A stretch of DNA of 63,673 bases, counting the filler, from Octopus bimaculoides (lineage: Eukaryota): NCBI RefSeq assembly GCF_001194135.2. It is 5 parts of 3 records of this genome, joined end to end, with 100 filler letters (N's around TTAATTAATTAA, not from the genome) between each part and the next. Parts side by side here need not be neighbours in the genome. Positions count along the whole stretch, not along the records: positions 31,773 to 53,462 come from NC_069000.1; 4 more parts are not named here. One strand, written 5' to 3'. A program made the translations under genes and the position numbers. The notes under the pieces were generated by a model. The model was not told the origin of the DNA. It made no database searches and saw nothing but the letters and a program-made list of their open reading frames with translations. This document shows, piece by piece, positions 33,676 to 34,195 of the stretch; the stretch's first letter is position 1; every line of letters begins with the position of its first letter.

Positions 33676-34195
33676 TTATGGTACTTTGACCTTAGAGTCC
33701 CTCTTAGCGTGAGGCATTCATGTATAGAAATGCCCTTATATAAATAAATATATTTTGGGGAATAGATGATGGATTTTTCCCTTATGAGGTTTTTTTCACG
33801 CTAGCTACTTGATAAATTCTTATAAAAGAATTCATCCTATTATTGAATTAATTAAAAAAATAAGTAGAATATATTCAGTGCTGAATTTATTCTAAAAAAA
33901 AAACACATGTACCGAGATGCGATTCGAAAAAGCCCGCCACTTACATACATATATAGGGATAAACAATCTTCTATGTACTATGCTGGATACATGAGGTGTT
34001 CGTTTGGTATGTTGATTTTTTTGTTTATTTCTATGTATCTTGACCATACTATACTGACGAGTAGAAGTTGCATAATACTGCAATAACTACGAAATCATGA
34101 TCTATAGTTTAGTTCGGTAAAAATGTGTTTATTATGGTAGTCTGACCTTAGAGACCCTCTTAGCGTGAGGCATTCATGTATAGTAATGCCCTTAT
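33676..34195 (+). mobile_element. Partial-tandem element: 456-bp unit bounded by 64-bp direct repeats and carrying a hammerhead ribozyme (retrozyme-like or PLE pLTR-like)
   Basis: 33676-33739 and 34132-34195 are 60/64 identical; the second copy runs into an N gap. The left end abuts a truncated family B SINE head (33600-33675). Confidence 0.7.
34048..34108 (+). ncRNA. Type I hammerhead ribozyme, intact core
   Basis: Stem I ACTATA(34048-53)/TATAGT(34103-08); CTGACGA(34054-60); stem II GTAG/CTAC plus GTTGCA/TGCAAT; GAAA(34091-94); palindromic stem III ATCATGAT; cleavage triplet AUC, cut after C34102. Confidence 0.9.

What the first reader, a model, noticed from the sequence alone, without database searches (positions are those of the whole stretch)
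33676..34195. Intact hammerhead ribozyme in a 456-bp partial tandem unit: candidate cephalopod retrozyme or circRNA-producing element
Seen: all HHR core residues (C3U4G5A6C7G8A9, G10.1-C11.1, G12A13A14, A15.1-U16.1, C17), a 6-bp stem I, a 10-bp two-part stem II and a perfect 8-nt palindrome ATCATGAT at stem III. The unit has no ORF, is bounded by 64-bp direct repeats (60/64 identical, offset 456 bp), and is rich in hairpins (33815-33832, 33865-33894, AGGCATT/AATGCCC). Known: minimal type I HHRs with palindromic stem III cleave as dimers and mark Penelope pLTRs and non-LTR retrozymes, which are non-coding tandem repeats that make small circular RNAs. Inference: tandem copies would self-cleave after C34102 into ~456-nt monomers, circularise and be retrotransposed by a PLE RT; PLE fossils occur in this window. 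I cannot tell whether the family is already described.
Basis: partly seen in the sequence, partly recalled or inferred. Interest (0 to 1): 0.85.

Follow-up and report, generated by a model that had tools for sequence, protein, structure and literature searches.

The report
Hammerhead ribozyme repeat in octopus DNA
A complete self-cleaving hammerhead RNA motif sits in a 456-bp non-coding head-to-tail repeat in the Octopus bimaculoides genome; it looks like one old copy of a known kind of small ribozyme-carrying retroelement, so it is a modest addition, not a new kind of thing.

Summary
At 34048-34108 (+) there is a full type I hammerhead. It has a 6-bp helix I, the core CUGACGA...GAAA, G10.1-C11.1, a bipartite 4+6-bp helix II, a loop-less 8-nt palindromic helix III (AUCAUGAU) and C17 at 34102. 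It is the only descriptor hit in the piece. None of 1000 shuffles, and nothing in 82 Mb of simulated sequence, reached the same stringency. The 64-nt direct repeat (60/64, offset 456) is real, and an assembly gap cuts the second copy. The piece is Octopus bimaculoides. The left edge of the repeat (33676) falls exactly where a tRNA-SINE copy breaks off (33602-33675), so this is an insertion of more than one unit. No RT or GIY-YIG coding remnant was found in the stop-free stretches screened across the 21.7-kb piece. A double-hammerhead dimer is predicted to be more stable than two monomers. No second copy of the unit turned up in the piece or in 134 kb of sampled octopus DNA. Cleavage, circular RNA and mobility are untested. 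My best reading is an old, probably dead copy of a non-coding, Penelope-type hammerhead element (retrozyme-like). That makes it a new member of a known kind.

The parts
33602..33675 (+). 5' part of an abundant octopus tRNA-derived SINE. It is truncated at profile position 81 of about 246 and forms the left flank, and probably the target, of the insertion.
   Evidence: An nhmmer profile built from 17 SINE copies in sampled octopus DNA matches here with E 1.4e-9 and stops one base before the repeat begins. blastn finds matches in three O. sinensis loci.
33676..34131 (+). First complete 456-bp unit of the head-to-tail repeat. It is non-coding and 30.7% GC.
   Evidence: Period 456 from the direct repeat. 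No ORF longer than 63 aa. No Pfam family. The circular monomer folds to -102.8 kcal/mol, z = -3.1 against shuffles; 12 of 14 control windows lie within z -1.2 to +1.1.
33676..33739 (+). Direct repeat, copy 1 (start of unit 1).
   Evidence: the repeat finder family D1, the reference copy.
34132..34195 (+). Direct repeat, copy 2 (start of unit 2). It is 60/64 identical to copy 1 and is cut off by the assembly gap.
34048..34108 (+). Type I minimal hammerhead ribozyme motif. Helix I 34048-53/34103-08; core CUGACGA 34054-60; helix II 34061-34090 (4 bp + AA/AA internal loop + 6 bp + hexaloop); GAAA 34091-94; helix III palindrome 34094-34101.
   Evidence: Sequence, descriptor scan, shuffle and simulation controls, and RNAfold/cofold, where the double hammerhead is -31.6 against 2 x -13.2 kcal/mol.
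34102..34103 (+). Predicted self-cleavage site, 3' of C17 (34102).
   Evidence: This follows from the hammerhead numbering rule applied to the motif. Cleavage itself was not tested.
34196..34327 (.). Assembly gap (132 N) that hides the rest of unit 2, any further units and the right junction.
   Evidence: The contig breaks inside the repeat, as expected when short reads meet a tandem array (inference).
33865..33894 (+). 30-nt imperfect palindrome (hairpin) inside the unit. Further hairpins lie at 33811-33836 and 33713-33733.
   Evidence: Self-blastn inverted matches and the fold.

Best explanation
This is one genomic insertion, in Octopus bimaculoides, of a short (456-nt) non-coding repeat that carries a Penelope-type minimal hammerhead ribozyme. 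In other words, it is a retrozyme-like, non-autonomous derivative of Penelope-like elements (PLEs).

Shown here:
- A complete type I hammerhead whose helix III is a loop-less palindrome.
- A head-to-tail arrangement of more than one unit.
- An insertion junction inside a SINE.
- No coding capacity, and no PLE ORF nearby.

Inferred mechanism:
1. Tandem units are transcribed.
2. Two neighbouring ribozymes pair through their AUCAUGAU palindromes into a double hammerhead. Each cuts after C17 (34102) and releases 456-nt monomers with 5'-OH and 2',3'-cyclic phosphate ends.
3. A host RtcB-type tRNA ligase circularises the monomers.
4. A PLE reverse transcriptase/endonuclease supplied in trans copies the circle or multimer for more than one turn. 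This yields insertions that read through the cleavage site, as this one does (34102 into 34103-34195).

The 6% divergence between the two repeat copies suggests that this particular copy is old and probably no longer active.
For: - Motif complete and unique in the piece. It is not reproduced in 1000 shuffles or in 82 Mb of simulated sequence at the same stringency.
- The dimeric double hammerhead is predicted 5.2 kcal/mol more stable than two monomers, with trans helix I and an 8-bp intermolecular helix III.
- 64-nt direct repeat at a 456-bp period. A 456-bp period means the copied template itself was about 456 nt, not a 3-4 kb PLE.
- A SINE profile match ends exactly at 33675, so 33676 is an insertion junction.
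- No RT or GIY-YIG match in the stop-free stretches screened across the piece.
- The unit is more structured than shuffles and than 12 of 14 control windows.
- The identical AUCAUGAU helix III occurs in a real, multi-copy and partly tandem hammerhead family in metagenome contigs. Rfam Hammerhead_1 recognises that family at 24-30 bits, and the Rfam consensus itself has a loop-less 4+4 helix III.
- A second minimal-hammerhead-like motif with an 8-nt palindromic helix III and a bipartite helix II turned up in only 134 kb of sampled octopus DNA, against 0.055 expected.
- Literature: minimal dimer-dependent hammerheads mark PLEs and are massively dispersed in metazoans (PMC4209133). Non-LTR retrozymes are short, low-GC tandem repeats that make circRNAs (PMC7229834). 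Retrozyme families span 51-972 bp and derive from PLE pLTRs (bioRxiv 10.64898/2026.07.22.740005). Octopus genomes carry many PLEs (PMC13282606, PMC8967140).
Against: - Rfam release 15 reports no hammerhead here at the gathering score, nor at E<=10, even in an 86-nt search. The likely cause is the 30-nt helix II, but the test was not met.
- Only one ribozyme and 1.14 units are visible.
- There is no second copy of the unit in the piece, in 134 kb of O. bimaculoides/O. sinensis DNA, in JGI metagenome contigs, or as translated ORFs in the protein collection. Existence of a family is therefore unproven.
- Helix I is AU-rich (5 of 6 pairs), and no loop-loop tertiary contacts are recognisable.
- PLE-type minimal hammerheads cleave poorly in vitro (PMC4209133).
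- The 4/64 differences between repeat copies imply an old insertion, so the intact core could be luck rather than selection.
- The right junction and any target-site duplication are hidden in the gap.
Confidence: 0.55

Rival explanations
1. It is an ordinary remnant of a Penelope-like element. On this view it is a solo or internally deleted pLTR/3'-UTR fragment of an autonomous PLE that was copied once as a partial tandem, not a dedicated non-autonomous family with its own amplification.
For: The ribozyme is of the PLE minimal type: loop-less palindromic helix III and enlarged helix II (PMC4209133). Most minimal hammerheads in metazoan genomes are single motifs attributed to truncated PLEs (PMC4209133). 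PLE insertions are typically partial tandems and cause assembly problems (PMC8557442). No second copy of the 456-nt unit was found.
Against: The repeat period is 456 bp, not the 3-4 kb expected of a tandem of a coding PLE. No RT/GIY-YIG remnant was found within about 2 kb upstream or about 19 kb downstream, on either strand. The gaps near the unit total only about 600 bp, too small to hide a PLE ORF. The distinction from a retrozyme is also partly semantic, because retrozymes are now argued to be pLTR derivatives (bioRxiv 10.64898/2026.07.22.740005).
Confidence: 0.2
2. It is a chance hammerhead-like sequence inside an unrelated local tandem duplication or low-copy repeat, with no ribozyme ancestry or function.
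For: Rfam hammerhead models give no hit. No other family member was found. Simulation predicts hundreds of relaxed chance motifs, and does not exclude up to roughly 200 strict ones, in a 2.7-Gb genome. The finding also came from a scan that looked at much sequence. The region is AT-rich and helix I is almost all A-U.
Against: The strict-motif chance rate is below 1 per 82 Mb. Several features that my descriptor did not require are present: a 6-bp distal extension of helix II, helix III exactly of the 4+4 loop-less form of the Rfam consensus, C at position 17, and location inside a head-to-tail repeat with an insertion junction. Real minimal hammerheads number in the thousands in PLE-bearing metazoan genomes (PMC4209133), so they should outnumber chance motifs.
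Confidence: 0.12
3. It is a hammerhead-bearing satellite or SINE-like repeat that is amplified without PLE machinery. Amplification would be by DNA-level tandem expansion, or by a LINE partner as for the Schistosoma Sm-alpha SINE or newt satellite 2. The ribozyme would only process the transcripts.
For: The arrangement is tandem and is cut by an assembly gap. Internal A-rich tracts lie at about 33855-33865 and 33895-33905. Octopus genomes are dominated by SINEs and LINEs (PMC13282606). Hammerhead satellites and SINEs are known in amphibians and schistosomes (background in PMC4209133, PMC7229834).
Against: ARAGORN finds no tRNA-like structure anywhere in the piece, so none inside the unit. There is no terminal poly-A at a visible junction. 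The insertion reads through the cleavage site from a truncated start (33676 is 29 nt past the site). This fits reverse transcription of a multimer or circle better than DNA-level expansion. The palindromic loop-less helix III is the PLE hallmark (PMC4209133).
Confidence: 0.1
4. The 64-nt direct repeat is an assembly artefact of the gap-ridden short-read scaffold. On this view there is only a single-copy sequence with a hammerhead-like motif.
For: The second copy ends exactly at an N gap. The 2015-type O. bimaculoides assembly is highly fragmented; the sampled loci are 9-27% N.
Against: Both copies lie within one uninterrupted contig (32612-34195) on the same side of the gap, 456 bp apart. They differ at 4 positions. 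This is not the pattern of duplicated contig ends flanking a gap.
Confidence: 0.03

Closest known systems
Minimal hammerhead ribozymes of Penelope-like elements (Cervera & de la Pena 2014, PMC4209133)
   Same: Type I topology. Full conserved core with G10.1-C11.1. Enlarged helix II. Helix III reduced to a short palindrome without a loop, so the active form must be a dimer. Found in an animal whose genome carries many PLEs. The host sequence is repeated head to tail.
   Different: At this locus the motif is not in a pLTR flanking an RT-EN ORF. Helix I is 6 bp rather than 4-5. There is no unpaired nucleotide between A9 and G10.1. Helix II is unusually long and bipartite (30 nt).
Metazoan non-LTR retrozymes (Cervera & de la Pena 2020, PMC7229834; Li, Clavereau & Pollet 2026, bioRxiv 10.64898/2026.07.22.740005)
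   Same: Short, non-coding, low-GC unit repeated head to tail and carrying one type I hammerhead per unit. No LTR, PBS, PPT or ORF. The unit length of 456 bp lies within the reported 51-972 bp. As in axolotl retrozymes, the ribozyme needs a dimer.
   Different: Most invertebrate retrozymes carry canonical hammerheads with loop 1-loop 2 contacts; this one is the minimal PLE-like variant. Only 1.14 units are visible. Family copy number, circRNA expression and target-site duplications are unknown. I found no report of these elements in cephalopods.
Rfam RF00163 Hammerhead_1 (type I)
   Same: The core is the same, and the consensus helix III has the same 4+4 loop-less form.
   Different: The covariance model does not report the window motif, even at E<=10. 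Control minimal hammerheads with a short helix II score 24-30 bits.
Metagenome minimal-hammerhead family with AUCAUGAU helix III (loci L014, L017, L024, L032, L051, L072, L103)
   Same: Identical GAAAUCAUGAUC segment, 4-6 bp helix I, type I topology, AT-rich contigs. One contig (L024) carries two identical copies 173 nt apart, a tandem arrangement.
   Different: Compact helix II (5-6 bp plus a short loop), different helix I and II sequences, different flanks. It is not the same family.

Membership tests
Hammerhead ribozyme, type I (Rfam RF00163, clan CL00010) | Conserved catalytic core C3 U4 G5 A6 N7 G8 A9 ... G12 A13 A14, A15.1-U16.1, H17 | tested here: met
   CUGACGA 34054-60, GAAA 34091-94, A34094-U34101, C34102.
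Hammerhead ribozyme, type I (Rfam RF00163, clan CL00010) | Three helices around the core, with helix I open (5' and 3' ends in helix I) | tested here: met
   Helix I 6 bp, helix II 4+6 bp, helix III 4+4 palindrome. Helices I and II also form in the fold of the whole circular unit.
Hammerhead ribozyme, type I (Rfam RF00163, clan CL00010) | Covariance-model score at or above the curated gathering score (34 bits) | tested here: not met
   No hammerhead match at gathering or at E<=10 in 596-nt and 86-nt searches. Control minimal hammerheads score 23.6-29.8 bits.
Hammerhead ribozyme, type I (Rfam RF00163, clan CL00010) | Site-specific self-cleavage 3' of position 17 | not testable with these tools
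   Needs in vitro transcription of monomer and dimer constructs.
PLE-type minimal hammerhead (PMC4209133) | Helix III absent or reduced to a short palindrome, so that only a dimer gives a stable helix III | tested here: met
   AUCAUGAU has no loop. The cofold dimer is -31.6 against 2 x -13.2 kcal/mol, with an intermolecular 8-bp helix III.
PLE-type minimal hammerhead (PMC4209133) | Larger than usual helix II (6-8 bp) and highly conserved G10.1-C11.1 | tested here: met
   10 pairs in two segments; G34061-C34090.
PLE-type minimal hammerhead (PMC4209133) | [quoted passage not shown] | tested here: not met
   A9 is followed directly by G10.1, and helix I is 6 bp. These are frequent traits of the family, not obligatory ones.
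PLE-type minimal hammerhead (PMC4209133) | Located in the pLTRs that flank an RT + GIY-YIG ORF | tested here: not met
   Pfam scans of stop-free stretches on both strands (at least 35 aa up to 38200; at least 40 aa and higher complexity beyond) found only PIF1 helicase fragments above cut-off. The paper itself notes that most genomic copies are solitary.
PLE-type minimal hammerhead (PMC4209133) | Belongs to a multi-copy consensus family with covariation in the same genome | tested here: inconclusive
   No further copy in the piece or in 134 kb of octopus DNA. A whole-genome search was not possible with these tools.
Metazoan non-LTR retrozyme (PMC7229834; bioRxiv 10.64898/2026.07.22.740005) | Head-to-tail tandem of a short unit (about 150-450 bp; up to 972 bp) with one type I hammerhead per unit | tested here: inconclusive
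   Period 456 bp and 1.14 units with one ribozyme are visible. The gap at 34196 cuts the second unit.
Metazoan non-LTR retrozyme (PMC7229834; bioRxiv 10.64898/2026.07.22.740005) | Non-coding; no LTR, PBS or PPT; low GC (<45-50%) | tested here: met
   ORFs of 63 aa or less, without homologues. GC 30.7%.
Metazoan non-LTR retrozyme (PMC7229834; bioRxiv 10.64898/2026.07.22.740005) | Canonical hammerhead with loop 1-loop 2 tertiary contacts (typical of invertebrate retrozymes) | tested here: not met
   The motif is the minimal variant. No conserved loop 1/loop 2 nucleotides are recognisable. Amphibian retrozymes also rely on dimers.
Metazoan non-LTR retrozyme (PMC7229834; bioRxiv 10.64898/2026.07.22.740005) | Expressed as linear and circular RNA monomers | not testable with these tools
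   No transcriptome search was available.
Metazoan non-LTR retrozyme (PMC7229834; bioRxiv 10.64898/2026.07.22.740005) | Co-occurrence with autonomous PLEs in the same genome | not tested
   Literature only: PLEs are abundant in octopus genomes, including 31 recently active families in O. vulgaris (PMC13282606, PMC8967140). None is present in this piece.

The most novel reading that the evidence does not exclude
Octopus genomes harbour a still-active, so far undescribed family of about 456-nt retrozymes built on a PLE-type minimal hammerhead with an unusually long bipartite helix II. The family would be transcribed from tandem arrays that short-read assemblies collapse into gaps, and would accumulate as small circular RNAs in octopus tissues.
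Probability: 0.15. Interest if true: 0.5.

Novelty: new member of a known kind. Interest (0 to 1): 0.3.

Why it matters
If a family census confirms it, this would extend hammerhead-bearing, circRNA-producing retroelements to cephalopods. Their genomes are unusually rich in SINEs, LINEs and PLEs, and their RNA biology (editing, neural transcriptomes) draws wide interest. It would also be a natural case of a minimal hammerhead with a long bipartite helix II that the current Rfam models miss, which is useful for improving search descriptors. As a single old copy it changes nothing in principle: minimal hammerheads linked to PLEs and retrozymes are already known by the thousand across metazoans, including molluscs.

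Tried and rejected
1. Rfam scans at the gathering score and at E<=10 over 21.7 kb, 596 nt and 86 nt gave no hammerhead hit. A positive control on metagenome minimal hammerheads shows that the model can see loop-less helix III motifs.
2. A family-specific exact-pattern scan of JGI metagenome contigs gave 0 hits. The general pattern gave 103 loci, of which 8 pass the stem test, but they belong to another family.
3. I searched the protein collection with translated unit ORFs of both strands, hoping to reach other copies through Logan contigs. No candidates came back.
4. An exact look-up of the window's PIF1 ORF found nothing on record.
5. I sampled 134 kb of O. bimaculoides and O. sinensis chromosomes through PIF1-like proteins. 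There was no copy of the unit.
6. I considered that the 64-nt repeat might be the continuation of the SINE head, because the B-box region looked weakly similar by eye. I rejected this: the SINE profile alignment ends at 33675 and gives no second hit at 34100-34195.
7. I looked for PLE RT/EN remnants by Pfam on stop-free stretches of the piece. None was found.
8. I looked for PLE ORFs beside the metagenome hammerheads. The result was uninformative.
9. Supplements of the two key papers hold no mention of octopus or molluscs in the text available.
10. The (AT)n tract just after the gap could reflect a PLE endonuclease preference for (TA)n. I do not count it as evidence, because (TA)n tracts are frequent throughout the piece; assembly gaps breaking at microsatellites is my general expectation, not something I tested.

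Full report
**Source and setting.** The piece (31773-53462) is a gap-ridden, microsatellite-rich scaffold of about 35% GC. A 209-aa ORF at 44741-45367 (-) is 100% identical to UniProt A0A0L8G197_OCTBM, a PIF1-like helicase of Octopus bimaculoides.

**The observation.** Reading the sequence and scanning with my own descriptor confirm a complete type I hammerhead at 34048-34108 on the + strand.
- Helix I is ACUAUA/UAUAGU (6 bp).
- The core is C3-A9 = CUGACGA (34054-60).
- Helix II is G10.1-C11.1 plus three further pairs, an AA/AA internal loop, and a 6-bp distal stem with a hexaloop (34061-34090).
- G12A13A14 follows, with A15.1 at 34094.
- Helix III is the loop-less palindrome AUCAUGAU (34094-34101).
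- C17 is at 34102.

It is the only hit on either strand of the piece. One of 1000 dinucleotide shuffles produced any relaxed hit, and none produced a hit of equal quality. In 82 Mb of first-order Markov sequence there were 11 relaxed and 0 strict hits. The motif is therefore far beyond chance for this piece. Over a 2.7-Gb genome, however, hundreds of relaxed chance motifs are expected, and up to roughly 200 strict ones cannot be excluded on this simulation, so context matters.

The 64-nt direct repeat (33676-33739 / 34132-34195, 60/64, offset 456) is confirmed. The second copy is cut by the N run 34196-34327. Both copies lie in one uninterrupted contig on the same side of the gap, which argues against a gap-flank assembly duplicate.

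**What surrounds it.**
- I built a profile from 17 copies of an abundant tRNA-derived SINE, collected from 134 kb of O. bimaculoides and O. sinensis chromosomes. It matches the window at 33602-33675 (profile positions 9-81 of about 246, E 1.4e-9) and stops one base before the repeat starts.
- A SINE truncated at its 3' side marks a later interruption. So 33675/33676 is an insertion junction, and the inserted DNA begins 29 nt downstream of the ribozyme cleavage site in unit coordinates.
- The insert then runs 456 nt, passes through the cleavage site and continues into a second unit. A more-than-unit, head-to-tail insert like this is what reverse transcription of a multimeric or circular template would give. 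It is also the arrangement described for Penelope-like elements (PLEs) and proposed for retrozymes (PMC4209133, PMC8557442, PMC7229834).
- The rest of the SINE was not found after the gap, so the right junction and any target-site duplication remain hidden.
- Pfam scans covered stop-free stretches on both strands (at least 35 aa up to 38200; at least 40 aa and higher complexity beyond). They found no reverse transcriptase and no GIY-YIG endonuclease. Only PIF1 helicase fragments passed their cut-offs.
- The unit has no ORF above 63 aa, and its ORFs have no homologues.

**Structure.**
- RNAcofold of two copies of the 69-nt ribozyme region gives the classical double hammerhead, with helix I formed in trans and an 8-bp intermolecular helix III. 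Its energy is -31.6 kcal/mol against -26.4 for two monomers.
- The circular 456-nt monomer folds to -102.8 kcal/mol (z = -3.1; the complementary strand z = -3.7), with helices I and II preserved.
- Twelve of 14 control windows in the piece lie between z -1.2 and +1.1. The two exceptions contain self-pairing microsatellites.

**Tests that failed or were inconclusive.**
- Rfam release 15 gives no hammerhead match at the gathering score or at E<=10, even when only 86 nt are searched.
- As a control, unrelated minimal hammerheads with the identical AUCAUGAU helix III, recovered from metagenome contigs, are found by Hammerhead_1 at 24-30 bits, below its gathering score of 34. The model consensus itself has a loop-less 4+4 helix III. 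The likely reason for the miss here is the 30-nt helix II, but the test was not met.
- No second copy of the unit exists in the piece, in 134 kb of octopus DNA or in the metagenome collection. A whole-genome search was not possible.
- That 134 kb did contain one other minimal-hammerhead-like motif: L105:13194-13277, with helix III ACAUAUGU, a bipartite helix II and G10.1.U11.1, lying 50 nt from an assembly gap. Only 0.055 relaxed hits were expected there, and 0 of 200 shuffles gave an 8-nt palindrome. This hints that octopus genomes, like other PLE-bearing metazoans, carry many such motifs.

**Interpretation.**
- The period of 456 bp, the non-coding AT-rich unit, the insertion junction and the absence of a PLE ORF fit a retrozyme-like, non-autonomous PLE derivative better than a coding PLE or its simple 5'-truncated copy.
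- The ribozyme itself is the PLE minimal type, not the canonical type with loop-loop contacts that is usual in invertebrate retrozymes (PMC7229834). This agrees with the recent argument that animal retrozymes derive from PLE pLTRs (bioRxiv 10.64898/2026.07.22.740005).
- The two repeat copies differ at 4 of 64 positions. If they were identical at insertion, this copy is millions of years old. My rough estimate is about 9 My, scaled from the calibration in PMC13282606, with a wide error. An intact core could then have survived by luck.
- Self-cleavage, circularisation by a tRNA ligase and mobilisation by a PLE RT are inferred from the literature, not shown here.

**Novelty and verdict.**
- Minimal hammerheads in PLEs and tandem hammerhead repeats are well documented across metazoans, including molluscs (PMC4209133, PMC7229834).
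- I found no paper describing them in cephalopods. The only overlap is the note that cephalopod Naiad PLEs lack canonical hammerheads (PMC8557442).
- The finding is thus a probable new member of a known kind, seen as a single old copy.
- Observation: confirmed. Interpretation: partly supported. Interest: modest (0.3).

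Noticed in passing
window 44741-45589 (-) and 39102-39389 (+): Fragments of a PIF1-like (Helitron-type) helicase: PF05970 at E 2.4e-52 and the Pif1 2B domain PF21530 at E 3.3e-15. The 209-aa ORF is 100% identical to O. bimaculoides A0A0L8G197, which identifies the source genome.
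   Followed up: partly
window 49846-50067 (+), 37486-37628 (-), 47657-47702 (-), 33602-33675 (+): Copies of an abundant octopus tRNA-derived SINE, detected with a profile built from sampled octopus DNA. The copy at 49846-50067 is nearly full length.
   Followed up: partly
window 32693-33007: A copy of another dispersed repeat, with many 68-81% identical copies in O. sinensis and O. bimaculoides samples. From memory it resembles the body of an octopus SINE in reverse orientation. A further tRNA-like B-box segment lies near 33340-33500.
   Followed up: no
L105:13194-13277 (O. bimaculoides CM046601.1): A second minimal-hammerhead-like motif: CUGAUGA...GAAA, 8-nt palindromic helix III ACAUAUGU, bipartite 5+6-bp helix II, G10.1.U11.1 and A17. 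It lies 50 nt after an assembly gap. Its flank has no other copy in the sampled DNA.
   Followed up: partly
L024:1021-1067 and 1194-1240; also L014, L017, L032, L051, L072, L103: Metagenome contigs of unknown eukaryotes carry a minimal hammerhead family with the same AUCAUGAU helix III. L024 has two identical copies 173 nt apart. Rfam Hammerhead_1 scores them 24-30 bits, below its gathering score of 34, so curated thresholds miss this class.
   Followed up: partly
window 40250-40817, 41218-41458, 42946-43175, 45794-46035: Long compound microsatellites, (GGAA)n, (CTT)n, (AGAT)n and (TAA)n/(GAA)n, create spurious long ORFs. Nine N gaps lie inside the piece, six of them longer than 100 bp and up to 886 bp, and several directly abut (AT)n or (AC)n tracts.
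   Followed up: no
L105:15296-15754 (-): A stop-free stretch that by eye resembles the C-terminal part of a LINE reverse transcriptase. It is not PLE-like and I did not test it.
   Followed up: no
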